Position numbers and translations under genes: made by a program. Source: Fonticula alba ATCC 38817 (taxonomy: Eukaryota > Protista > Nucleariida). Taken from it: 30,748 nt of DNA. This document shows, piece by piece, positions 18-30,210 of this stretch (position 1 is its first letter; each line of letters starts with the position of its first letter). The notes under the pieces are model-generated. The model was not told the DNA's origin and ran no database searches. It saw nothing but the letters and a program-made list of their open reading frames with translations. The DNA lies in assembly GCA_000388065.2 (NCBI GenBank), contig KB932211.1. The stretch is one strand, 5' to 3'.

Positions 18-3000
18 ACTGCATCCCGGCCTGTGAGATTGCCCACTGCCGGCACTGCCTCGAGGGCAGGTGCCTCGCCTGCGAGCGGGGCCTCCTCCTG
101 GCGGAGGATGGCCGCACGTGCGGGCACTCCTGCGCCGACCCCGATGCCACCGTGGTCGAGGGGCGGTGCTCGGCCCCGGCCCCGGCCTTCGTCCCGTGGA
201 TGGTCACCACGGCCGACCCCTCGTGGGGGGACTTCCAGCCGGTGGGCTTCACGCACGCGCGCATGGCCCCCGCCCCGGCCGGCGGCGGCGACAACCCGGA
301 CCACCGGTGGCCGGTGGCCACGGTCGAGCCCAGCCTGGTCGGGTACTTCCCCTCGGATCCCGACACCCTGACCCTGGTGCCGGTGGGCCAGTCGGCCGAG
401 GTCCAGCACCTGAGCGTGCCCGGCATGCTGGACGAGTTCATTGTCGGGGACCGGACGGCGGCGGGGGCGGCGGCGCCCACGACGACAGCCGGGGGCCCGG
501 CCGGCGCCATGTCGGCCGCCGGCCCGGCGTCGGCCATCGGCCAGCTCCTGGCCCCGAGGGACCCGGTCCATCTGGGGGCGCTGCTGCGGGCGGCGGACCG
601 GCCGCCGGGCGGTGGGCCGGCCGGGCACCCGGCCCGGCGGCCGGCCGTCAGCCTGGCCACCATGGCCGGGGCGGCCACCGCGCTGGCGCACTTCCGCCCG
701 GCCACCGGGACCCTGCCCGGCCACGCCTTCGGGTATATGGTGGCCCCGAGCGCCCTGACCCGGCCGCTGCCGGTGACCAGCACCCTGACCATGCTGCTGT
801 TCGGCAGCAGCATGGCCGGGCCGGGCCCGGCCCTGCGCGACCCCCTCCGGTGGATGGTGGACGTGCCGCTGCCCTTCCCGGCGGGCGAGCTGGCCCTGGC
901 CCCGGCCCCAGCCCACGGGCAAACCTTCCCGCAGCTGGCCTCCCTCGTGCGGACCACCACCGGCGAGCATCTGCTGGCCATGCCCGGGGCCATGATCGGC
1001 TACTGGGACCTCCAGTGGGGCCTGGCCGGGGTGCTGCTCAGCCTGCCGAGCGTCAGCCCGCGCCTGAGCATCCCCCGGCTGGGGCACCGGCCGGGGGAGG
1101 CCGTCGGCCTGGCCCTGCCGGCCGTGGCCGAGCTGTATCCGCGCCTGGCCGGCCGGCCGGCCGACCGGCCCGGGGCCCTGTTCATCAACATGGCCGCCCA
1201 GAGCCCGGACTTCCTGTATGTCCAGCCGCCGGGCGATGATGTTCCCCTGCACCAGGCGCTGTATTACCAGCGCGCGGAGGGGGCCCCGGCCCAGGGGATC
1301 CTGGTCCGGGCGGATGCCCTGCCGGCCGGCATCGTGGCCCAGCCCTACGACTGCCTGTGGGACCAGTCGCTGTGGGACCTGGACCGGGCCACCGGCGAGG
1401 AGCCGTACAAGACCCCGGCCGGGCTGCTGGCCGAGCCCTTCCTGCCGGGCAACCGCTCCGGGCGCCGGGACTCCGGCTGCCCGCTGGCGGTCATCGAGCA
1501 CCATGCCGTCAGCCCGACGGCCGAGCTGGTGGCCATGGACACCAACCGCGACGGCCAGGAGGACCTGGTGCTGCTGGACCGGGCCACCGGCCGCGTGGTC
1601 TTCTACCTGGCCCAGCCCGGGGTCGAGGGCGTGGCCTTCCGCCGGGTGGTTGTCCTGCCGGGGTTCCCGCCGGCCGGCCGGCCGGCCGCCGGGTCGCCGG
1701 CCGCCCGGCCGAGCATGCACCTGCTGGACGTCAACCACGATGGCCGGCTGGATGTCGTGCTGCTGGATGGGCCGGACGGGGCCGGGTCGCCGGCGCGCGG
1801 CCCGCGCATCCGGGTGTTTGCCCACCCGGACGCCGAGGCTCCCCGGTGCCCGGCCGGCACCCACCTCGACGCGGCCAGCTTGACGTGCGTGTGCCCCGGC
1901 GGGGAGGCGGTCCACTTCGACACGGCGGCCGGCCGGTGCGCCTGCGTGGCGCACGCCGACCCGGGCCCGGACGGCCGGTGTGCCTGCCCGGCCGGGCTGG
2001 TGGCCGCCGCCGGCCAGTGCGCCTGCCCGGCGGGCACGCGCCCGGTCTTCGACGAGGCCACCCTGGCCGAGGTCCTGCCCCGGGAGTGTGCCCCGTGCGA
2101 CGCCTCGTGCGCCACCTGCTCGGCCGGGCCGGCGCGCGCCTGCGGGACCTGCCCGCCGGGCCGGCTGCTGGTGCTGGCCCCCGGCCCGTCGGCCTGCGTG
2201 AGCGCCTGCCCGGCCGGCATGAACCCCACGTCCGCGGGGGGGGCCTGCGTGGCCTGCGGGCCCGGGTGCGATGCCTGCACCACGGCCGACCGGTGCACCG
2301 CCTGCGCGCCGGGGTTCTACCTCTCGGCCGAGGACCACCAGTGCCACGCGTGCGATGTCTCCTGCGGGGCCTGCTCCGGGCCCGGGGCGCTGGCTTGCCG
2401 GGGCTGCGCGGCGGGCTTCCTGCTGGAGCCGGCCACCGGCCGCTGCTGGTCCGACTGCCCGGATGGCACCGGGCCGGACCTGGTCACCGGCCAGTGTCAG
2501 CCGTGCGGCAATGCCGCCTGCCGGCGGTGCGTCTCCCCGGCCGCCGGGGCCCACTGCTCGGCCTGCCCGGCGGGCTTCACCCTGGGCAGCAGCCCGCGCG
2601 AGTGTGTCCCCTGCGGCCCCGGCTGCCTGGCCTGCTACACGGCCGAGTTCCCCACCTGCCTGGCCTGCCAGCAGGGCACGGTCCTCCACGAGCAGAAGTG
2701 CCTGCCGGCCTGCCCCGATGGCATGTATGCGGTGGCCGCGCCGCCGCCGGCCCAGCCCGGGCTGCCGGCGTCGGCCGTGTGCCGGCCCTGCCACAGCACC
2801 TGTGCCCAGTGCACCGGGCCCCTGGCCAGCCAGTGCACCGCCTGCGTGGACCCGCTGGCCGAGCTGGCCTCGGGCCAGGACCCCGCCTGCCGGTCGGTCT
2901 GCCCGGATGCCGGCTCGCAGCCGGCCGCCCTGGCGGCCTGCCCCTGCTCGGCCAGCGGCTGCCTCTCCTGCCAGTCGACCGGGCCCTATGTGTGCGCCCG

Positions 3001-3943
3001 GTGCATCGTCGGCTACCTGATGACGGCCGACGGGCAGTGCATCCGCCAGGGCCAGTGCCCGCCGCTGACGTACGCCGACATGCTGGCCCGGTCGTGCTAC
3101 CCGTGCGGGGTTTTCTGCAGCTCCTGCCATCCCGGCCGGCCGGAGTACTGCCTGACCTGCTCCTCCCGCGATGGCTTCCTCCCGCTGCCCGGGGGCTACT
3201 GCTCGCGGACCTGCCCGGAGGTGGGGTACTTCGTGGACAACCTCGACCGGGGCCGGTGCAAGGCCTGCCCGGCCAACTGCTGGACCTGTGCCCGGTCCAC
3301 CGGGTGCGACATGTGCCACGCCGGCTTCTTCATGCATCAGGGGGCCTGCCTGGCCGCCTGCCCGGAGGGGACCTTCCCCAGTGCCGGGGGGTGCCATGCT
3401 TGCGACCGGCAGTGCGCCACCTGCACCGGGCCCGGGCCCGGCCAGTGTGCCACCTGCCCGGCGGGGGCGGTCCTGTCGGCCGGCGGCCGGTGCCTGGCCG
3501 GCGGCCGGTGCCCGGCCGGCAGCGCCGACTACCTGACGCCCGGCGTGTGCGCGGCCTGCGCCGGCGGCTGCGCCGCGTGCACCGGCCCCGCGCCGGACCA
3601 ATGCACCGCCTGCATGTATGGCATGCTGCCGGACCCGCGCGCGGCCGGCGCCTGCCTGGCCGCCTGCCCGGATGGCTGGTTCCCGGACCCGGCCGCGAGC
3701 CTGTGTGCCCCTTGCCACCGGAAGTGCGCCACATGCGCCGGGCCCGGGGGTGACAGCTGCCTGGCCCCGGCCCCGGGGGCCGGCCGGCGCACCGCCCTGG
3801 CCATCGGCCTTGGCGTGGGGCTCCCGCTGCTGGTGGTCCTGGTGGCGGCCGTGGTGGCGGCCATCCTGCTCCTCCGGCGGAAGGCCTCCTCGCCGGAGCC
3901 CGCCAAGCAGGACGCCGTGGAGATGGCCCCTGTGCCTGCCTGA
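18..3943 (+). CDS. Terminal exon of a large type I membrane protein: FG-GAP/VCBS-like Ca-binding motifs, many furin-like Cys-rich repeats, one TM helix and a ~24-aa cytoplasmic tail; 5' exons lie upstream of the window
   Basis: Branch-like CTAAC at 1-5 and CAG acceptor at 15-17. The frame is open from 18 (CIPACEIAHCRHCLEGRCLAC...) to TGA at 3941-3943. DxNxDG motifs MDTNRDGQEDL (~1535) and LDVNHDGRLDV (~1724). Repeated CxxCxxxCxxC units from ~1850 to 3760. Hydrophobic ALAIGLGVGLPLLVVLVAAVVAAILLL followed by RRK (~3794-3883). Confidence 0.88.
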
Positions 3944-22209: not shown

Positions 22210-24091
22210 TGCCGAGACGGCCGTCGAGTATGACGATGGCAACCCGGATGTCGCACACCTGCGCATCTTGCGCGCCCACACCGAGCCCAAGGAGCAGGGC
22301 ACCTTCTGGCCGGCGGCCGACCAGGCCCCCGGGCCCGGGGTCCTGCAGCGCCCGGCCAGCCCGCACTGGCCACTCGCCGACCCGGCCACCGCGGCCGCGT
22401 GCCCGGCCATCGCGGCCGAGCTCGGGTACCTCTGTGCCCTGCCCGGGCCGGGGCTTGGGGCGGTGGCCCTGCGGGACCGGCCGTCCGAAGCGCCGGCCTG
22501 CGCCCCGGCCGCGTGGCCCTCCCCCGGGGTGGCGGCCCTGCCAGCCTGGCTGGCCAGCTCAAGCCCGCGCGTCATCCGCGGCCGGGGCTTCGCCGTGGCC
22601 ACCGGCCTGGACTCGGGCCCCGTCCCGGGGGCCGGGCCCGCCGGCGAGTCGGCCGCCGAGCGCCTGGTGGCCCGCGCCGCCGCCCTCCTGGCCGAGGCCG
22701 GGCTTGACCTGGCCCACTCGGCTCGCTGGACCCTGCACACCTGGCTCCCGGAGGGGGGCTCCGCCTGCTCGGCCGCTCGGCAGGCCTTCCACCGCGATGT
22801 CACGCGCCTGGTGGCAGCCATCCCCGGAAGCCCCTCCCCCCCGGCGGTGGGCTTCCTGCCGCCGATGCCGCTGGCCGGGCTCGGCCCGGATGCCGGCCCG
22901 GTGTTCGGCCTGCATGTTCTGCTGGTGACCGATCGGTCGGTCAGTCGTGATGCCCTGTCGGCTGGGAGCCTCTCCTACTGGCTGCCGCCGGCCCCGGCCG
23001 GGGCCTCCCTGGCGTCGGTCATTCGCCCGGACACCTCGGTCGGGCCTGAGTCCGGGCCCGGGGCCCGGGGGCTGGCCGTGGCCTCGGCCTTGGAGGCCCG
23101 GCTGCCGCACACCGGCCAGCCGGCCGCATGCCACTGCCCGGGGTTCCGCTTCGCCCTGGTCGCCCGGCATGCGGCCCTGCTGGCTGACCGCCTATGTGAC
23201 CTGTGGCCTGGGGCCTTTGCCCGGCGGACGCCGGTGTGCGCGGACTTCGCCTGCTGGCCGGCCACCTCCCAGGTGTTGGCCGCCCATGCGGCTGGCTGCG
23301 CGCATGCCCTGGCCCATGCCCTGCTCCCGGGCAGCCATTCCCCCGACCGCCCGGGCGGCGACTCGTCGGCCTATGACCAGGACGAGGAGGACGAGGACGC
23401 CCCGGCCCCCCCGGGCCGGAGCTTCGGCCACCTCCTGGCCGGGACGGCCTTCCACCTGGCCGGGCTGCTGACCGACACGCAGGCTGCCCTCTGCCGGGCC
23501 ATCTGGACCGGGGCCTTCGCCGACCGGGGCATCGCCGCCCCGCCGGCCGTTGTGTGCGCCGGGGCCGGGGCCGACTTCCTGGACGCCTGCCACCCGGTGT
23601 TTGCCGGCCTGCCGGCCGGGCCCCCGGCTGCCAGCCCGACTTGGTCCCCGGCCGACGACGGGCAGCGGCTCCTGCCGGCCGGCGCCGGTCTCTGGCTTCA
23701 CCGCGGCCCGTCGAGCGTTGTGCTGTCGCTGGCCGCCGAGGGCCCGGCGCTGCCGAGCCTGGAAGACGCCCTGCGCGCTGTGGCCCGGGCCTTCGGCCAT
23801 CTGGCCGCCGCGGACCGGCTGTCGGTCATCGACTCTACCTGGCACCTGGCCAGGGAGGGCCTTCCCCTGGAGGAGGAGGGCGCCTGGGCCGCCGGCCTCG
23901 GCGGGTCGCCGCTGGAGCACGGCACCCGTGCGGTGGCCAGCCAGATCCACCTGCTGGCTGACGGCGCGCCCGCTTGGCTCCGCCTTTCGGACCCCCCTGC
24001 CCAGGCGGACCGCCATGTGCCTGATGCGCTGCCGGCCGGCCACCGGCCCCTGCTGGTGTGCACGGTGCTCGTGGAGGAGCGCCTGCCCTGA
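22210..24091 (+). CDS. DPH6: Diphthine--ammonia ligase, last exon: end of the ATPase domain plus a long C-terminal extension with degenerate RidA/YjgF-like regions; reconstructed protein 851 aa
   Basis: CAG acceptor at 22207-22209 is phase 2 and completes ...RRIVL|AETAVEYDDGNPDVAHLRILRAHTEPK. LLAEAGLDLAH and LSAGSLSYWLPP resemble the RidA-like extension of fungal Dph6. TGA at 24089-24091. Confidence 0.82.
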
Positions 24092-24380: not shown

Positions 24381-24446
24381 TCGCAGAGAGGGAGGGGGGG
24401 GGGGGGGGGGGAGAACGAGACACACACGCAGCAGGAACCCGGGGGT

Positions 24447-25902
24447 CTACTTGGCGCCGGGGTCCGCAAAGTGCTGCTTGGCCAGCAGGAGGTCGTGGCT
24501 GCCGGTGGAGGACACCGACGAGGAGGACCCGCCAGATGACATGGTGTTGATGGAGGACGACTGGCTGGACGAGCCGGACTGGATGGACGCCGCATAGATC
24601 GACGGCGAGGGGGAGGGCGAGGGCCAGCCGCCCCCGGGCCCGCCCCCGCCGGCAACCCCGGCCGCGGGGTCCGGTCTATGGGATGGTGGACCTGGGGCCG
24701 GTCGCGATGGCGGGAGCTCATCCATCTCGAAGGCGCCGGCGGGGTGGTGCGACCGGGCGGCGCCGGGCAATGAGGAGGAGGCCCGGCCGCCGTCAGTGGA
24801 TGCCATGCCATGGGGCAGGCCCCCGCCGCCGCCGCCGCCGCTGCTGCTGCTGCTGCTGGGCGACCGCCGACCGGACACCGAGGAGCCGGCCTTGTGCAGG
24901 GCGCCGCCGGCCTGGAGGAGGTCCCCCCGGCCGCCGCCAGACCGGAGCAGGCCGAGGCGCTGCCGATGCCAGCGCAGGCAGACAATCGACGCCACAGCCA
25001 TCAGCAACACCGCGGTGGCCAGTAGCAGCGACCCGCCGATGTAGAGCACCTGCGTGGAGACATTGCACTGGCCATGGCTGTAGGACAGGCACCGCCCGCA
25101 CATGTGGTACAGGGTGCCGGTGTACTGCGTGGCCAGGGCCTGCTCGAGACTCAGTGCCCCGGCCAGGGGGTCGACCATGATGATGGCCGCACTGCCACTG
25201 CCGCTGCCACCACCACCACCATAGATGGGGTTCGCGGAGGCGGAATGCGCCGACGAGCTGCCGCCACTGGAGCCCCCCTCGGCGGGCGGCGTGCGCGAGT
25301 AGAAGCACAGCTTGGCCGGCTTGCCCCACTCATTGGCTTCCAGGCAGATGCTTGTCCGGAATTGGTGGGGGTTGTACCGAGCAAGCTCGGCGCCGGAGCC
25401 GGGGTCGTCCGGCCGCCCGAGCGTCAGCGACATCTCGGAGGTCTCGAGGACCTCGAACTCCGAGCACCACGTGCACCCGGACTGGATGGCGCACGGCTGG
25501 CAGGAGAGGTTGTTTTGGCAGGCTGTGCGTCGGGGGGAAGGGGGGGGGGGGGGGGGACCGCAAATGCACATGTTAGAGGGGCCGGGGAGAGGGCGAAAGG
25601 CGACGCCCAGACACGGGTGGAAGGAGCGCATGCGAGGCAAAACCAAGCACGGCTGCGCCGGGGGCGCGGGTGTACGCACGAGTGCTCAGCAGAACACCGC
25701 ACTCGGAAGGATGCACGCCGGCCAGCGGCGACAAGCCAGGGATGGCACACGGCCCGACGAAGTGCAGAGTGGCCACACAGACACCGATGGTGAAGCAACT
25801 GATGAACACCAGCAGCCCGAAGAGCCGCAGGGCGAAGAGAATCTGCGAGCCGTGGAAGATCCCGAGCAGAGGAGGAGGTCAGCATGGACAATCAGGAGGG
25901 GG

Positions 25903-25945
<43 letters not shown>

Positions 25946-27863
25946 CAAGTGAACACCCGAGCAGATGAAGACACGCACGGTGTGAAACAGCGGGCTGCCG
26001 GAGAAGGAGCCCGAGAAGGGAGCGCAGGAGGAAGGGGAGCCCTTGCCGCCGCCGTTGGCCGGAAGCCCGGCCGCCTGCGCTTCGCCCGTGACCTCCAGGA
26101 ACAGCAGCGACGGCGAGGAAGACCAGGGCGAGCCGCTGCCCGGGCCGCCGCTTGTGGGCCCGCCACCGCCACCACCGGCCGAGGGGGGGGAGGAATGGTG
26201 ATGATGCGAGGACGGGGGGCCAGTGTCATTGGCCAGGCCCGAGTGGCTGGACCGGTCGGCCGCGGACGCGATGGCCCCGCTGCCATGGGCATCGGCCGAA
26301 CCGCCGCGCGGCGACCCCGGCGCCCCGGCCGCCAGGGGACTGCTCGCCAGCCCCGGCCCGTGGGAGTGCGTCAGATGCGAGTGCGCCATGCTGGGGCCGC
26401 CGCCGCCGCCGCCGCCGCCGCCACTGCCAGCCCCATGATCCAGGGCATAGAGCATCGCCTGCCCCGAGGAGGGGTCCTGATGGAAGGGGTGCGCGTGATG
26501 CTGCGAGTGATGGGGCAGATGCTCGGCCCCGGGGCCGGCCACCAGGCCGAAGCCCGACTGGCCACCCGCGCCGGGGGCCGCAAAGAGCGACCCCGGATGC
26601 TCGGCCCCGGAGACCATGCCCTCCGGCCAGGCGGTGCTGCTGCCGACGCCGAAGTGGCCTGCTGCGGCTCCTGCTGCGCCCGGGGCACCGCCACCGGCCA
26701 GGGCATCTTCCCCCCGGCCGGCGCCGGCCCCCCCGGCCAGGCCCCCATCAAAGAGCAAGTCCCCATCGTCGAACCCGGCACCGGAGGCCCACATGGCCTC
26801 GCCCCGCTGGGCGTGATGCCACTCGCGGATGAGCTTCTGCAAGTCCGCCCGGTTGCTGGCATAGTGGAAGGCCGAGAGGGCGGTGCGCGTGAGCCCCGGC
26901 GGCGGGGGCGGGTGGTAGATCGGCGGGCACTCGCCCTCCTTCAGGGCCAGCAGCTGGTCGAAGGAGAAGCTCGGCTGCGGGGCGGGCCAGATCTCGTCCA
27001 CATTTTCGATGATCAAATGCGCCCCATGCCGCGCCAGAAGCTCCAGGATGTCCGGCTGGTTCCAGAAGGCCGCCGCGTGCGCCGGCGTCCAGGCATCGCC
27101 CACCAGGATCACCTCGTCGCCGGTGGCGCCCACGCTGGCGGGGGCCGGCGGCGACCCGGCGAGACATGCGGCGTCCTCCGCCCCAGGGCCGGGGCCAGCG
27201 GCATTGCTCGGGGCCGGGGCCGGGGCCGGGGCCGCCGTCGTGCCGGCCACAGGGGCGCCCGCTGCCCCAGCACCATCGTCATCATCATTGAAGAGCGTGC
27301 GCCCGGGGTCCTCATCATCGGCCGGCGTGCTGTCGATCGTGCGATCCGGGTCCAGGTCCGACCCGTCGGAATCCGACCCCGAGTCCATGCCCGACCCGGA
27401 GGACTTCAGATCCGACCCGGAGGACTTCAGGTCCGAGCTGGAGCTGTGCGACAGGGCGCCCGGCGTCCCGGGGCCGGCCGCGGGGGACGCCGAGCCGGCC
27501 ATCACCGCGGCCAGGGCGTCGGGCACCCCGGCCGCCGGGTCGCTTGTCAGGAAGATGGCCTCCCCGGCGGCGGCGGCCACCGATGCCAGGGCATCCGGCA
27601 CCAGGAACGGCACCAGGGCATAGTGCCCAAAGAGGCCGACCTTTCGCCGGGGCACCGGCAGCAAGGCCTGGGCATTGGGGCTGGCGCCCAGATCCAGCAG
27701 GCGCTTGGCCAGGTCGACGTAGCCCTTGCAGGCGGCGATGTGCAGCAGGGTGCCGTACCCCGGGCAATCCGGGCTGCGACGGTGGGTGGGGGGGGCGGGG
27801 GGGGGTGGGGGGGAAGTTGGACATGCGCCAGCGAGTCAGCACAAACCCCCATACACGAGCTCG

Positions 27864-27905
<42 letters not shown>

Positions 27906-29205
27906 CGAAGGAAGGCCCCCCGTGGTGAAGAGCGAGCAGGGCACATGGCAAAACACCCCCGGCCAGGGCGCCCCCGACACGACTGGGGCGGCAGCAGCGG
28001 CCCATACGTACATGACCCGGTCGATGAGGTGCAGACGGTCGGGGAAGGTCTCCAGCAGGTCGATCTCGTGCGACAGGCGCTGGTATTCGGCATTACGGGC
28101 GGAATCCAGGTCGGCCGAGGTGTGGCCCCGCTGGCGGAAGACGCGTTGCAGGGCCAGCGACAGCTTGCTGTCGCTCTCGGCCAGGTCGAGGGCCGTGTCA
28201 TTGTCGGAATTGGTCTTCAGCAAGGACGCCCCGTGCGCCAGGAGGACGGCCGCCGCGCGCGATGCCCCCCAGAAGATGGCCACATGCAGGGGCGTCCACC
28301 CGTCGACATCCTGGGCGTCGACATAGTCGCTATCCGCGGTGAAGGAGTGGCTGTGGGCACGGCGGGCAGCGAAGCCGGGTCAGCATCGGGAAGGCGGCGG
28401 CTCCCCTGTCCCTCCTCCCAGGGGGGCAGGAGCTGGCGCGGAAGGGCAAAGGAGAAGGGCACGGGAGACAGGGCGGAGGGAGGGACGCGGGGAAAGGACA
28501 AAGGCGCGCAACGCACGGCGGTGCCGGGAGGCTCCACTCCCCGGCCGAGTAGGCCCGGTCGATCGGGGCCACCCCGAGCCCGGGGCTGACCCGGCGTCCG
28601 GTGGCCGCGGCAGCCGCATCGCGACGAGCCGCCATCAGCAGCAGCCAGCAGAGGGCCGCATTGTCATTGGCCGCGGCCATGTGCAGGAGGCCGACGCGCA
28701 AGTGGTCGCGCGCCTCGGCCGGGCTCACCAGCCCGGCTGCCAGCAAACGCGCCGCCTCGGCCGTGTCATTGCGCGAAACCGCGTCCCGGAGGAGGACCGC
28801 CGGGGCGAAGACCGGCCGGCGAAAGCGCTTGCGCGGGGCGGCGGCCGTGGCCGTGGCCGTGGCGGCGGTCGCCGCCGACGGCGCATCGCCATCCGGCTCG
28901 GCGGCCGCCGCCGCCGTCGCCGCCGGGTCGGCCGGCACCTCGATCGGGCCGTTGGACAGATCCGACAGCGGCGGTGGCGGCGGGCACAGGACCGGGTCCG
29001 ACAGCCGCAGCGACTGGACCACCTCATGGAGGTTGTACGGGGTGACCACGGCGGCGGCGGCCTCTTGCGCCGCGTCGAAGGTCACCTGCTCCTGGTTGAG
29101 GATGATGTGCCCGCCAAGGTGCCCGGCCCCGCCGGCCGACGCCAGCGGCGGGGTCACGATCGGCAAGGGGTGCGACGGCACCGGCGGCTGGTTTAGAAAG
29201 GGGTG
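24447..29205 (-). CDS. MYPT/PPP1R16(TIMAP)-like ankyrin-repeat protein joined to a TM-PSI-TM module (at least 1353 aa). Exons ~29205-28517, 28350-28012, 27773-25979, 25842-25680, 25522-24447; 5' end lost in or beyond the 29425-30210 gap
   Basis: Ankyrin motifs DVDGWTPLHVAIFWG, DNDTALDLAE, GTLLHIAACKGYVDLAKRLLDLGA and WTPAHAAAFWNQPDILELLARHGA occur in the MYPT/TIMAP order, including the intervening ARNAEYQRL helix. Intron phases 2,2,0,1 all match. TM1 25842-25753, PSI-like CQNNLSCQPCAIQSGCTWC, TM2 25049-24975, TAG at 24447-24449. Confidence 0.8.
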
Positions 29206-29424
29206 CTTGGCCCGGCGCGCTCGCTCCGGGGGAGTGAGTTCCCTGTGTGCAGCGGGGGGGGGGGCGGAGGGGCGGGGGGGGCGACAGGGGAGACGGGCGG
29301 CTCTGCGGGTCAGTGGGGCCGTGGGGGGCGGGCCTTCGCGTGCGCGGGTGAGCACGGCGGGGCGCACCATCTCCCCTGCTCGACGTGCCAGCGGCGGAGC
29401 TGCTCCGCGCGCGCACGGCGGGCC

Positions 29425-30210
29425 NNNNNNNNNNNNNNNNNNNNNNNNNNNNNNNNNNNNNNNNNNNNNNNNNNNNNNNNNNNNNNNNNNNNNNNNNNNN
29501 NNNNNNNNNNNNNNNNNNNNNNNNNNNNNNNNNNNNNNNNNNNNNNNNNNNNNNNNNNNNNNNNNNNNNNNNNNNNNNNNNNNNNNNNNNNNNNNNNNNN
29601 NNNNNNNNNNNNNNNNNNNNNNNNNNNNNNNNNNNNNNNNNNNNNNNNNNNNNNNNNNNNNNNNNNNNNNNNNNNNNNNNNNNNNNNNNNNNNNNNNNNN
29701 NNNNNNNNNNNNNNNNNNNNNNNNNNNNNNNNNNNNNNNNNNNNNNNNNNNNNNNNNNNNNNNNNNNNNNNNNNNNNNNNNNNNNNNNNNNNNNNNNNNN
29801 NNNNNNNNNNNNNNNNNNNNNNNNNNNNNNNNNNNNNNNNNNNNNNNNNNNNNNNNNNNNNNNNNNNNNNNNNNNNNNNNNNNNNNNNNNNNNNNNNNNN
29901 NNNNNNNNNNNNNNNNNNNNNNNNNNNNNNNNNNNNNNNNNNNNNNNNNNNNNNNNNNNNNNNNNNNNNNNNNNNNNNNNNNNNNNNNNNNNNNNNNNNN
30001 NNNNNNNNNNNNNNNNNNNNNNNNNNNNNNNNNNNNNNNNNNNNNNNNNNNNNNNNNNNNNNNNNNNNNNNNNNNNNNNNNNNNNNNNNNNNNNNNNNNN
30101 NNNNNNNNNNNNNNNNNNNNNNNNNNNNNNNNNNNNNNNNNNNNNNNNNNNNNNNNNNNNNNNNNNNNNNNNNNNNNNNNNNNNNNNNNNNNNNNNNNNN
30201 NNNNNNNNNN
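29425..30210. other. Assembly gap (786 N), probably hiding 5' exon(s) of the ankyrin gene
   Basis: N run. A possible minus-strand TAG acceptor lies just before the gap (~30228-30230). Confidence 0.9.

What the first reader, a model, noticed from the sequence alone, without database searches (positions are those of the whole stretch)
24447..29205. MYPT/TIMAP-like PP1-targeting ankyrin protein fused to a two-TM, PSI-ectodomain membrane module
The ankyrin core follows PPP1R12/PPP1R16 motif order. The large exon ends at a GTGCGT donor (25978) and splices in phase 0, with no N gap, to TM1. That downstream exon has an in-frame stop just upstream and no ATG, so it cannot start its own gene. An extracellular PSI-like loop (CQNNLSCQPCAIQSGCTWC...CLSYSHGQCNV, reminiscent of PTTG1IP), TM2 and a Ser/Gly-rich tail follow. 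Animal TIMAP/MYPT3 reach membranes by CAAX prenylation. An integral, receptor-like phosphatase-targeting subunit with an ectodomain is an architecture I do not recognise and could link extracellular cues to PP1/myosin control.
Basis: partly seen in the sequence, partly recalled or inferred. Interest (0 to 1): 0.75.

Follow-up and report, generated by a model that had tools for sequence, protein, structure and literature searches.

The report
Membrane-spanning MYPT-like ankyrin protein of Fonticula
The amoeba Fonticula alba really does make one spliced mRNA joining an ankyrin domain of the myosin-phosphatase-targeting (MYPT) type to a two-pass membrane module with a cysteine-rich outer loop. 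The outer module has no detectable relatives, and binding to the phosphatase PP1 is unproven because the usual docking motif is degenerate.

Summary
cDNA contigs from two samples splice the large ankyrin exon to the TM1 exon (25979|25842) and on to the Cys-rich exon (25680|25522). All junctions are GT..AG, there are no mismatches, and intron depth is zero.

The public model H696_05456 of Fonticula alba ("hypothetical protein", 1178 aa) has the same exons. It starts at a Met inside ankyrin repeat 2, whereas the frame stays open upstream to an N gap. The real protein is therefore at least 1366 aa.

The ankyrin core is most like PPP1R12/MYPT:
- The best single alignments are all to PPP1R12 proteins.
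- hhalign gives probability 98.8 % and includes the MYPT-specific insert.

Other MYPT features fail or stay open:
- The RVxF place reads RRPVF.
- There is no MyPhoNE, no C-terminal MYPT domain and no CAAX box.
- A tree is unresolved.

The outer loop starts with the exact first-half cysteine spacing of true Fonticula PSI domains. It fails the PSI models, lacks Cys6 and folds at low confidence. It has no relative among 1.84 billion representative proteins, in its own genome or in JGI metagenome contigs.

Verdict: this is a real, lineage-specific membrane-anchored protein with a MYPT-derived ankyrin domain. PP1 targeting is possible (about 0.3) but not shown. The scan has not reported this locus before.

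The parts
28517..29424 (-). Exon 1. Its 5' end is open and it runs into the N gap 29425-30210. There is a candidate in-frame ATG at 29370-29368.
   Evidence: cDNA contigs cover 28517-29219. The frame has no stop up to the gap. The ATG was checked.
28807..28821 (-). RRPVF, at the place where MYPT proteins carry the RVxF PP1-docking motif. R and F are kept; the V/I position is Pro.
   Evidence: BLASTP and hhalign alignments to PPP1R12. The motif scan finds no canonical RVxF.
28630..28806 (-). Ankyrin repeats 1-2. The start codon of the public model H696_05456 (28680-28678) lies inside repeat 2.
   Evidence: Colinear alignment to MYPT residues 43-97; P0001 sequence; coordinates.
28351..28516 (-). 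Intron 1 (166 nt, GT..AG).
   Evidence: Joint 28350|28517 in X2 and X4.
28012..28350 (-). Exon 2: ankyrin repeats 3-4 (28304-28170) and the MYPT-type helical insert (28169-28014).
   Evidence: Pfam Ank hits; hhalign to the MYPT profile.
27774..28011 (-). Intron 2 (238 nt, GT..AG).
   Evidence: Joint 27773|28012 in X2 and X4.
25979..27773 (-). Exon 3: ankyrin repeat 5 (27760-27668), a 190-residue low-complexity insertion (27667-27098), ankyrin repeat 6 (27097-27002), then a long Gly/Ala/Ser/His-rich linker of about 340 residues.
   Evidence: Pfam Ank at residues 8-35 and 228-253. A cDNA contig is continuous over 26437-27773, so there is no hidden intron. BLASTP to PPP1R12.
25843..25978 (-). Intron 3 (136 nt, GTGCGT..CAG), between the ankyrin exon and the TM1 exon.
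   Evidence: Joint 25842|25979 in X2 and X4, with 163 nt or more on the shorter side and zero intron depth.
25680..25842 (-). Exon 4. Hydrophobic segment TM1 lies at 25842-25756 (29 residues), followed by a short stretch with two Cys.
   Evidence: Hydropathy above 2.0 over residues 950-984 of the model. No ATG in the exon, and a stop 12 codons upstream in frame.
25523..25679 (-). Intron 4 (157 nt, GTGCGT..CAG).
   Evidence: Joint 25522|25680 in X2 and X4.
25056..25522 (-). First part of exon 5: the exoplasmic Cys-rich loop. It begins with a PSI-like first half (25520-25464, C-x5-C-x2-C-x5-C-x-W-C). It has 10 Cys in this exon, two N-x-S sequons and an internal Gly/Ser run.
   Evidence: Alignment with two true Fonticula PSI domains. 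PSI_integrin E 0.042, below cut-off. Sequons.
24975..25049 (-). TM2 (25 residues), followed by RWHRQR.
   Evidence: Hydropathy peak 2.59. It is the only confident helix in the AlphaFold model, with pLDDT 84-97.
24447..24974 (-). Cytosolic Ser/Gly/Pro-rich tail (175 residues) and the stop codon TAG at 24449-24447.
   Evidence: Translation; cDNA contigs 24409-24810 and 24870-25522.

Best explanation
This is one real gene of Fonticula alba (public model H696_05456, annotated too short at its 5' end). It encodes a two-pass membrane protein of at least 1366 residues.

Proposed layout:
- The N-terminal ankyrin domain faces the cytosol. It derives from, or is closest to, the MYPT/PPP1R12 type: two groups of repeats split by the family's helical insert, here interrupted by lineage-specific low-complexity insertions.
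- A disordered linker of about 340 residues leads to TM1, which acts as an internal signal-anchor.
- About 180 residues then lie on the exoplasmic side. This loop has 12 Cys and two N-glycosylation sequons, and it starts with the first half of a PSI motif.
- TM2, followed by a cluster of basic residues, returns the chain to the cytosol, where a Ser/Gly-rich tail ends the protein.

Proposed mechanism (inferred): a membrane-embedded scaffold that holds an ankyrin binding surface at the cytosolic face of a membrane. PP1c is the single most likely partner, at about 0.3.

Shown: the splicing, the frame, the hydrophobic segments, the similarity to MYPT and the Cys pattern.
Inferred: the topology, glycosylation and disulfides, and any partner.
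For: - Spliced cDNA contigs in two samples cross all four introns, with zero intron depth.
- The spliced model is one open frame of 1366 codons, with GC3 of 0.79-0.90 in every exon.
- The public protein P0001 is identical to the model from its Met onwards.
- The best single HSPs are all PPP1R12.
- hhalign against a MYPT profile gives probability 98.8 %, E 7e-17, and includes the insert. The insert alone gives E 3e-4 with 44 % identity.
- The alignments of exon 1 and ANK6 are colinear with MYPT.
- There are two hydrophobic segments, with basic residues only after TM2.
- The Cys spacing is identical to two true Fonticula PSI domains.
- PP1-type catalytic subunit genes exist in the genome.
Against: - There is no canonical RVxF, MyPhoNE, SILK or CAAX, and no PF15898.
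- The RVxF place has Pro where V/I is required.
- Another Fonticula gene (L003) keeps a canonical RRIHF before MYPT-like repeats. The motif is therefore conserved in this organism where it is used.
- The tree of the ankyrin core is an unresolved star.
- Exon 1 alone matches MYPT only weakly (E 0.005-0.08).
- The loop fails the PSI models and folds at pLDDT 41.
- No relative exists with which to test conservation.
- Contigs do not bridge the (GGC)n repeat at 26387-26436.
Confidence: 0.65

Rival explanations
1. The protein is a working PP1-targeting subunit. Its ankyrin domain and the degenerate RRPVF site hold PP1c at the membrane, and the outer loop senses a ligand or contact, making it a receptor-like myosin phosphatase regulator.
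For: - The ankyrin core is MYPT-like, including the second repeat group that binds the PP1c C-terminus in MYPT1 (PMC13545437 for the MYPT1 contacts).
- R and F of the docking motif are kept at the homologous place.
- PP1c genes are present.
- The exoplasmic loop is Cys-rich with sequons.
Against: - There is no canonical RVxF or MyPhoNE.
- Pro sits at the V/I position.
- No binding test was possible.
- The loop has no relatives and no known ligand-binding fold.
- There are no MYPT C-terminal regulatory elements.
Confidence: 0.25
2. The ankyrin region is a general protein-binding scaffold that no longer binds PP1, or never did. The gene would be one of several lineage-specific Fonticula membrane proteins that pair a Cys-rich outer module with cytosolic ankyrin repeats.
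For: - PP1 motifs are absent.
- The tree is unresolved.
- The Atlas feature search sees only generic ankyrin clusters.
Against: The best and longest alignments are specifically to PPP1R12 and include its non-repeat insert. The order of all elements matches MYPT.
Confidence: 0.35
3. Gene fusion with processing. A MYPT-like gene fused to a downstream small type I membrane protein of the PTTG1IP kind (signal peptide, PSI, TM, tail). TM1 would be the former signal peptide and might still be cut by signal peptidase, giving two polypeptides.
For: - The order hydrophobic segment, PSI-like motif, TM, short basic stretch, tail is that of small PSI proteins.
- The Atlas feature search lists small PSI-domain and PTTG1IP_C clusters among the nearest, with scores of 0.81 and 0.76. 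These are leads only.
Against: - TM1 is about 29 hydrophobic residues, long for a signal peptide.
- Pfam gives no match to PTTG1IP_C or PSI.
- No stand-alone homologue was found anywhere.
Confidence: 0.1
4. Artefact: a mis-assembly, a read-through chimera of two genes, or a non-coding downstream part.
For: Contigs do not bridge two simple repeats, and cDNA depth rises from 5' to 3' (about 8, 12.6, 17.8, 19.6 in X2). An internal start upstream of 26389 is therefore not excluded.
Against: - The splice from exon 3 into exon 4 is exact, in phase, and seen in two samples.
- Intron depth is zero.
- The TM1 exon has no ATG.
- GC3 and the Cys/TM features fit the frame.
- The depth gradient is gradual, as expected with 3' bias.
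Confidence: 0.04

Closest known systems
PPP1R12A/B/C (MYPT1, MYPT2, MBS85)
   Same: The order of elements is the same: basic stretch with a conserved R and F, ANK1-2, ANK3-4, helical insert (RG..D..AR..E), ANK5, ANK6. Identity is 35-36 % over 139 residues, and hhalign probability is 98.8 %.
   Different: There is no canonical RVxF (RRPVF instead), no MyPhoNE, and no C-terminal PRKG1-interacting or coiled-coil domain (PF15898). Low-complexity insertions of 45 and 190 residues lie between repeats. Two membrane spans and an outer loop are present, which no MYPT that I know of has (own knowledge).
PPP1R16A/B (MYPT3, TIMAP)
   Different: They attach by a C-terminal CAAX prenyl group. This protein ends in ...PGAK, has no CAAX and spans the membrane twice. 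No PPP1R16 sequence was returned by the searches, so no direct comparison was made.
PSI domains (PF01437), including the two true PSI domains of Fonticula (G000 C1:4562321-4562476 and C3:1281578-1281661)
   Same: The spacing C-x5-C-x2-C-x5-C-x-W-C is identical, with Ala after Cys3.
   Different: Cys6 is missing just after CxWC, and the next Cys comes 47 residues later. There is no PSI model hit at E up to 10, apart from PSI_integrin at E 0.042 on a 61-residue piece.
PTTG1IP/PBF and other small single-pass PSI proteins
   Same: Hydrophobic segment, PSI-like start with an N-glycosylation sequon, TM, and cytosolic tail. [quoted passage not shown]
   Different: There is no significant sequence match. 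Here the module has no start codon of its own and follows about 1000 cytosolic residues. The loop is far longer.
Fonticula gene at L003 (G000 C1:3403705-3407178)
   Same: Its repeats are MYPT-like (42 % identity to ANK2-4, hhalign E 3e-18).
   Different: It carries a canonical RRIHF motif upstream. It has only the first repeat group, no insert, no second group, and no membrane spans were seen.

Membership tests
MYPT (PPP1R12/PPP1R16) | Two groups of ankyrin repeats in MYPT order, separated by the family's helical insert. | tested here: met
   hhalign probability 98.8 %, E 7e-17, over MYPT 103-234. The insert alone gives E 3e-4. The top five single HSPs are PPP1R12. ANK6 aligns to MYPT 236-267.
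MYPT (PPP1R12/PPP1R16) | RVxF docking motif directly before ANK1. | tested here: not met
   The homologous place reads RRPVF: R and F align, but V/I is replaced by P. Neither of two RVxF regular expressions matches anywhere in the 1366 residues.
MYPT (PPP1R12/PPP1R16) | MyPhoNE motif (RxxQ[VIL][KR]x[YW]) N-terminal of RVxF. | tested here: not met
   There is no match in the 136 residues available upstream of RRPVF or elsewhere. The true N-terminus is hidden by the N gap, so a more distant copy cannot be excluded.
MYPT (PPP1R12) | C-terminal PRKG1-interacting / coiled-coil domain (PF15898). | tested here: not met
   Pfam found nothing in exons 3-5. The precomputed Pfam list for P0001 holds only Ank families.
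TIMAP/MYPT3 (PPP1R16) | C-terminal CAAX prenylation box. | tested here: not met
   The protein ends in PGAK, and the CAAX expression has no match.
MYPT (PPP1R12/PPP1R16) | Groups with the family in a tree. | tested here: inconclusive
   In a tree of 29 rows and 159 columns, the MYPT rows form a clade (100/99), but the Fonticula row sits on an unresolved polytomy with a long branch of 1.8.
MYPT (PPP1R12/PPP1R16) | Binds the PP1 catalytic subunit. | not testable with these tools
   The PP1c genes of Fonticula (L001, L002) are split into many short exons. No stored full-length protein was available.
PSI domain (PF01437) | Spacing of Cys1-Cys5 with CxWC. | tested here: met
   Cys5, 11, 14, 20 and 23, Ala15 and Trp22 are invariant in the alignment with two Fonticula PSI domains that pass the Pfam cut-off.
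PSI domain (PF01437) | Whole-domain profile score over the cut-off, with Cys6-8 close behind. | tested here: not met
   There is no PF01437 hit at E up to 10, and the locus is not found by the genome-wide family scan. The next Cys comes 47 residues after CxWC.
PSI domain (PF01437) | PSI fold. | tested here: inconclusive
   The single-sequence AlphaFold2 model has mean pLDDT 41.5, and the loop is below 50 throughout. No fold search was run on it.
PTTG1IP family | Sequence match to the family (PSI plus PTTG1IP_C, PF27838). | tested here: not met
   There is no Pfam hit. The only signal is a feature-space neighbour at 0.76, below the level the tool calls more than a lead.

The most novel reading that the evidence does not exclude
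An integral-membrane, receptor-like member of the MYPT lineage. The outer PSI-like loop would respond to a ligand or cell contact and control PP1 (and so myosin II or other cortical substrates) held by the cytosolic ankyrin domain. This would be a direct transmembrane link from outside cues to a phosphatase holoenzyme in a relative of fungi that aggregates to form fruiting bodies.
Probability: 0.1. Interest if true: 0.75.

Novelty: new variant of a known kind. Interest (0 to 1): 0.42.

Why it matters
MYPT-type subunits are studied almost entirely in animals, where they are soluble or lipid-anchored. A membrane-spanning version in Fonticula, an early branch on the fungal side of the opisthokonts, would show two things. 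First, the MYPT ankyrin scaffold predates animals. Second, it can be wired straight into a membrane protein.

The finding also corrects a public gene model. The annotated start cuts off ankyrin repeats 1-2 and the site homologous to the PP1-docking motif.

The limits are plain. The protein is known from one species, its outer module is an orphan, and nothing shows yet that PP1 is bound.

Tried and rejected
- The word search with exon 3, residues 1-330, found nothing because low-complexity words filled the candidate list.
- RNA runs X19 and X22, which carry another organism label, gave only poly-G artefacts at 25532-25557 and 27784-27813. They say nothing about this gene.
- The single-sequence AlphaFold2 model of the loop was too poor to search with.
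- The Atlas feature search on the ankyrin part gave only generic ankyrin clusters.
- PDB searches did not settle the family. Exon 2 hits many designed and natural ankyrin proteins, with MYPT1 (1s70_B) having the longest single stretch, 10-89. Exon 1 and the insert alone hit nothing.
- The tree was unresolved.
I did not try it by another route.
- JGI metagenome contigs hold no relative of the TM-loop-TM part.
- Complex prediction was not run, because no stored full-length PP1c sequence was available.
- Literature searches found no paper on H696_05456 or on myosin phosphatase in Fonticula.
- The idea that the PSI part is a separate gene was considered and rejected. It has no ATG, and the splice from exon 3 is shown.
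Full report
**What is there.** The window is very GC-rich (0.65-0.79). The gene lies on the minus strand. From the three-frame translation and the splice-site strings I derived five exons:
- exon 1: open at the 5' end, down to 28517
- exon 2: 28350-28012
- exon 3: 27773-25979
- exon 4: 25842-25680
- exon 5: 25522-24447

The phases fit at every junction. Joined inside a script only, the exons give one open frame of 1366 codons that ends at TAG 24449-24447. GC3 is 0.79-0.90 in every exon in this frame and lower in the introns.

**Transcript evidence.** One search for sequencing runs found small 2012 runs of the same organism. Their type is only guessed as RNA. Laid on 24400-29424, contigs of X2 and X4 (two samples, one study) match with no mismatches and skip exactly the four predicted introns:
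- 25522|25680
- 25842|25979
- 27773|28012
- 28350|28517

All four are GT..AG on the gene's strand, so these runs are cDNA. One contig carries 408 nt of exon 3, all of exon 4 and 653 nt of exon 5. Another carries exons 1-3. Exon 3 is continuous from 26437 to 27773, so the long insertion between repeats is not a missed intron.

Bin depths over the introns equal the exon share alone (X2: 6.77, 10.5 and 10.7 observed against 6.8, 10.5 and 10.7 expected from a depth of 17.8). Intron depth is therefore zero, and nothing ends or starts there.

Depth rises gradually toward the 3' end, as expected with 3' bias. Two simple repeats (26387-26436 and 24811-24869) are masked by the tool and are not bridged by listed contigs. 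This leaves a small chance of an extra internal start in exon 3. The TM1 exon has a stop 12 codons upstream in frame and no ATG, so it cannot begin a protein of its own.

**Identity and public model.** A full HMMER search of 1.84 billion representative proteins with the loop plus TM2 (211 residues) returned one protein, P0001. It is 'hypothetical protein H696_05456 [Fonticula alba]', 1178 aa. It is identical to my spliced model from the Met at 28680.

The public start lies inside ankyrin repeat 2. Upstream of it the frame stays open for about 250 codons, up to the N gap, and cDNA covers at least as far as 29219. The public model is therefore truncated. It lacks repeat 1, half of repeat 2 and the site homologous to the PP1-docking motif. 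An in-frame ATG at 29370 is a candidate start, but the true start may lie in the gap.

**How searches were run.** They were done exon by exon by reference, or with the database protein P0001.

**The ankyrin core.** Pfam sees only ankyrin repeats, in exons 2 and 3. The evidence for a MYPT relationship is as follows.
- In two word searches with residues 50-210 of P0001, summed scores favour proteins with many repeats. Ranked by best single alignment, however, the top five are all PPP1R12 proteins: 55-63 bits, with 35 % identity over 136-139 residues for the four long ones. Every other protein scores 50 bits or less.
- Against a small MYPT profile (A1), hhalign gives probability 98.8 %, E 7e-17, over MYPT residues 103-234. 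That span covers ANK3-4, the non-repeat insert and ANK5.
- The insert region alone still aligns at the right place, with 44 % identity and E 3e-4.
- ANK6 aligns to MYPT 236-267.
- Exon 1 aligns, weakly but colinearly, to MYPT 31-97.

The order of elements is that of MYPT, with Fonticula-specific insertions of about 45 and 190 residues.

A tree of the 159-column block does not place the protein: it sits on a long branch in a polytomy.

**PP1-docking features.** By the description in PMC13545437, MYPT1 has three parts:
- a disordered N-terminus with MyPhoNE and RVxF motifs;
- contacts of the second group with the PP1c C-tail.

Here the RVxF place reads RRPVF. The R and F align with invariant MYPT residues, but the V/I position is Pro. 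No canonical RVxF, MyPhoNE, SILK or CAAX occurs in the 1366 residues, and there is no PF15898 domain.

Fonticula does have PP1-type catalytic genes. It also has a second MYPT-like gene (L003) with a canonical RRIHF ahead of repeats that are 42 % identical to MYPT ANK2-4. The motif is therefore kept in this organism where it is used, which weakens the case for PP1 binding here.

I could not run a complex prediction. The PP1c genes are split into many short exons, and no stored full-length protein was available.

**The membrane module.** Hydropathy shows two segments only: TM1 (29 residues, 25842-25756) and TM2 (25 residues, 25049-24975). Basic residues cluster right after TM2 (RWHRQR). This argues that the tail and the N-terminal part are cytosolic and that the roughly 180 residues between the spans are exoplasmic. 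That loop has 12 Cys and two N-x-S sequons.

The loop starts with C-x5-C-x2-C-x5-C-x-W-C. The two Fonticula loci that pass the Pfam PSI cut-off have exactly this spacing, and the same Ala after Cys3. After CxWC, however, the usual Cys6 is missing and the next Cys comes 47 residues later.

Further tests of the loop gave little:
- No PSI model matches at E up to 10, apart from PSI_integrin at E 0.042 on a 61-residue piece.
- AlphaFold2 without an alignment gives pLDDT 41.5, with only TM2 confident.
- The Atlas feature search lists small PSI and PTTG1IP_C clusters as neighbours at 0.81 and 0.76. The tool itself rates such scores as leads only.

So a PSI-like first half is shown, and a PSI domain is not.

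The module has no relatives:
- among 1.84 billion representatives, a collection that draws on EukProt among other sources;
- in its own genome;
- in JGI metagenome contigs.

**Reading.** The most likely account is a lineage-specific two-pass membrane protein that carries a MYPT-derived ankyrin scaffold on its cytosolic side.
- PP1c remains the best single guess for a partner, at about 0.3, but the degenerate docking site speaks against it.
- A plain scaffold role is about as likely.
- The order hydrophobic segment, PSI-like start, TM, tail resembles small type I PSI proteins such as PTTG1IP (PMC11655445). Origin by fusion with such a gene, with TM1 as the former signal peptide, is therefore possible but cannot be tested without relatives.
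This hints that such combinations recur in this organism.

**Novelty and score.** The gene model is public but uncharacterised, and I found no paper on it. I know of no MYPT-type protein that spans the membrane (own knowledge).

Membrane proteins with cytosolic ankyrin repeats are common, though, and integral-membrane PP1 regulators of other families are known (own knowledge). I rate this a new variant of a known kind. Interest is moderate because function is unproven and the protein is known from one species.

Noticed in passing
window 28678-28680 and upstream to 29424: The public model H696_05456 starts at a Met inside ankyrin repeat 2. The frame is open and transcribed upstream (cDNA to 29219), with a candidate ATG at 29370. 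The N gap 29425-30210 hides the true 5' end.
   Followed up: partly
L003 (G000 C1:3403705-3407178), minus strand, ORFs 1871-3289 and 1321-2556: This is a second MYPT-like gene of Fonticula. It has a canonical RVxF (RRIHF) and, after an apparent intron, repeats 42 % identical to MYPT ANK2-4 (hhalign E 3e-18). It has no insert and no second repeat group. It is a likelier bona fide PP1 regulator than the gene studied here.
   Followed up: partly
L009 (G000 C1:4561400-4563400) and L010 (G000 C3:1280600-1282700): These are the only two loci in the genome that pass the Pfam PSI cut-off. They lie in open frames of 513 and 1110 residues. L009 has several Cys-rich repeats after the PSI domain.
   Followed up: no
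L002 (G000 C3:2690493-2693615): A PP1-type catalytic subunit gene is split into many short exons and interrupted by a short run of N in the assembly.
   Followed up: no
window 24447-29244 (runs X6-X9, X13-X15): Soil and sediment metagenomes, and DNA runs under another organism label, hold 0.07-0.63 of the stretch's 31-letter words. Close relatives or other strains of this organism therefore occur in those samples. RNA runs under that other label (X19, X22) held nothing of the gene except poly-G artefacts.
   Followed up: no
window 22268-24091, plus strand: A 607-codon open frame converges on this gene and ends 356 nt from its stop codon. In DNA this GC-rich, long open frames are common, so it may or may not be a gene.
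   Followed up: no
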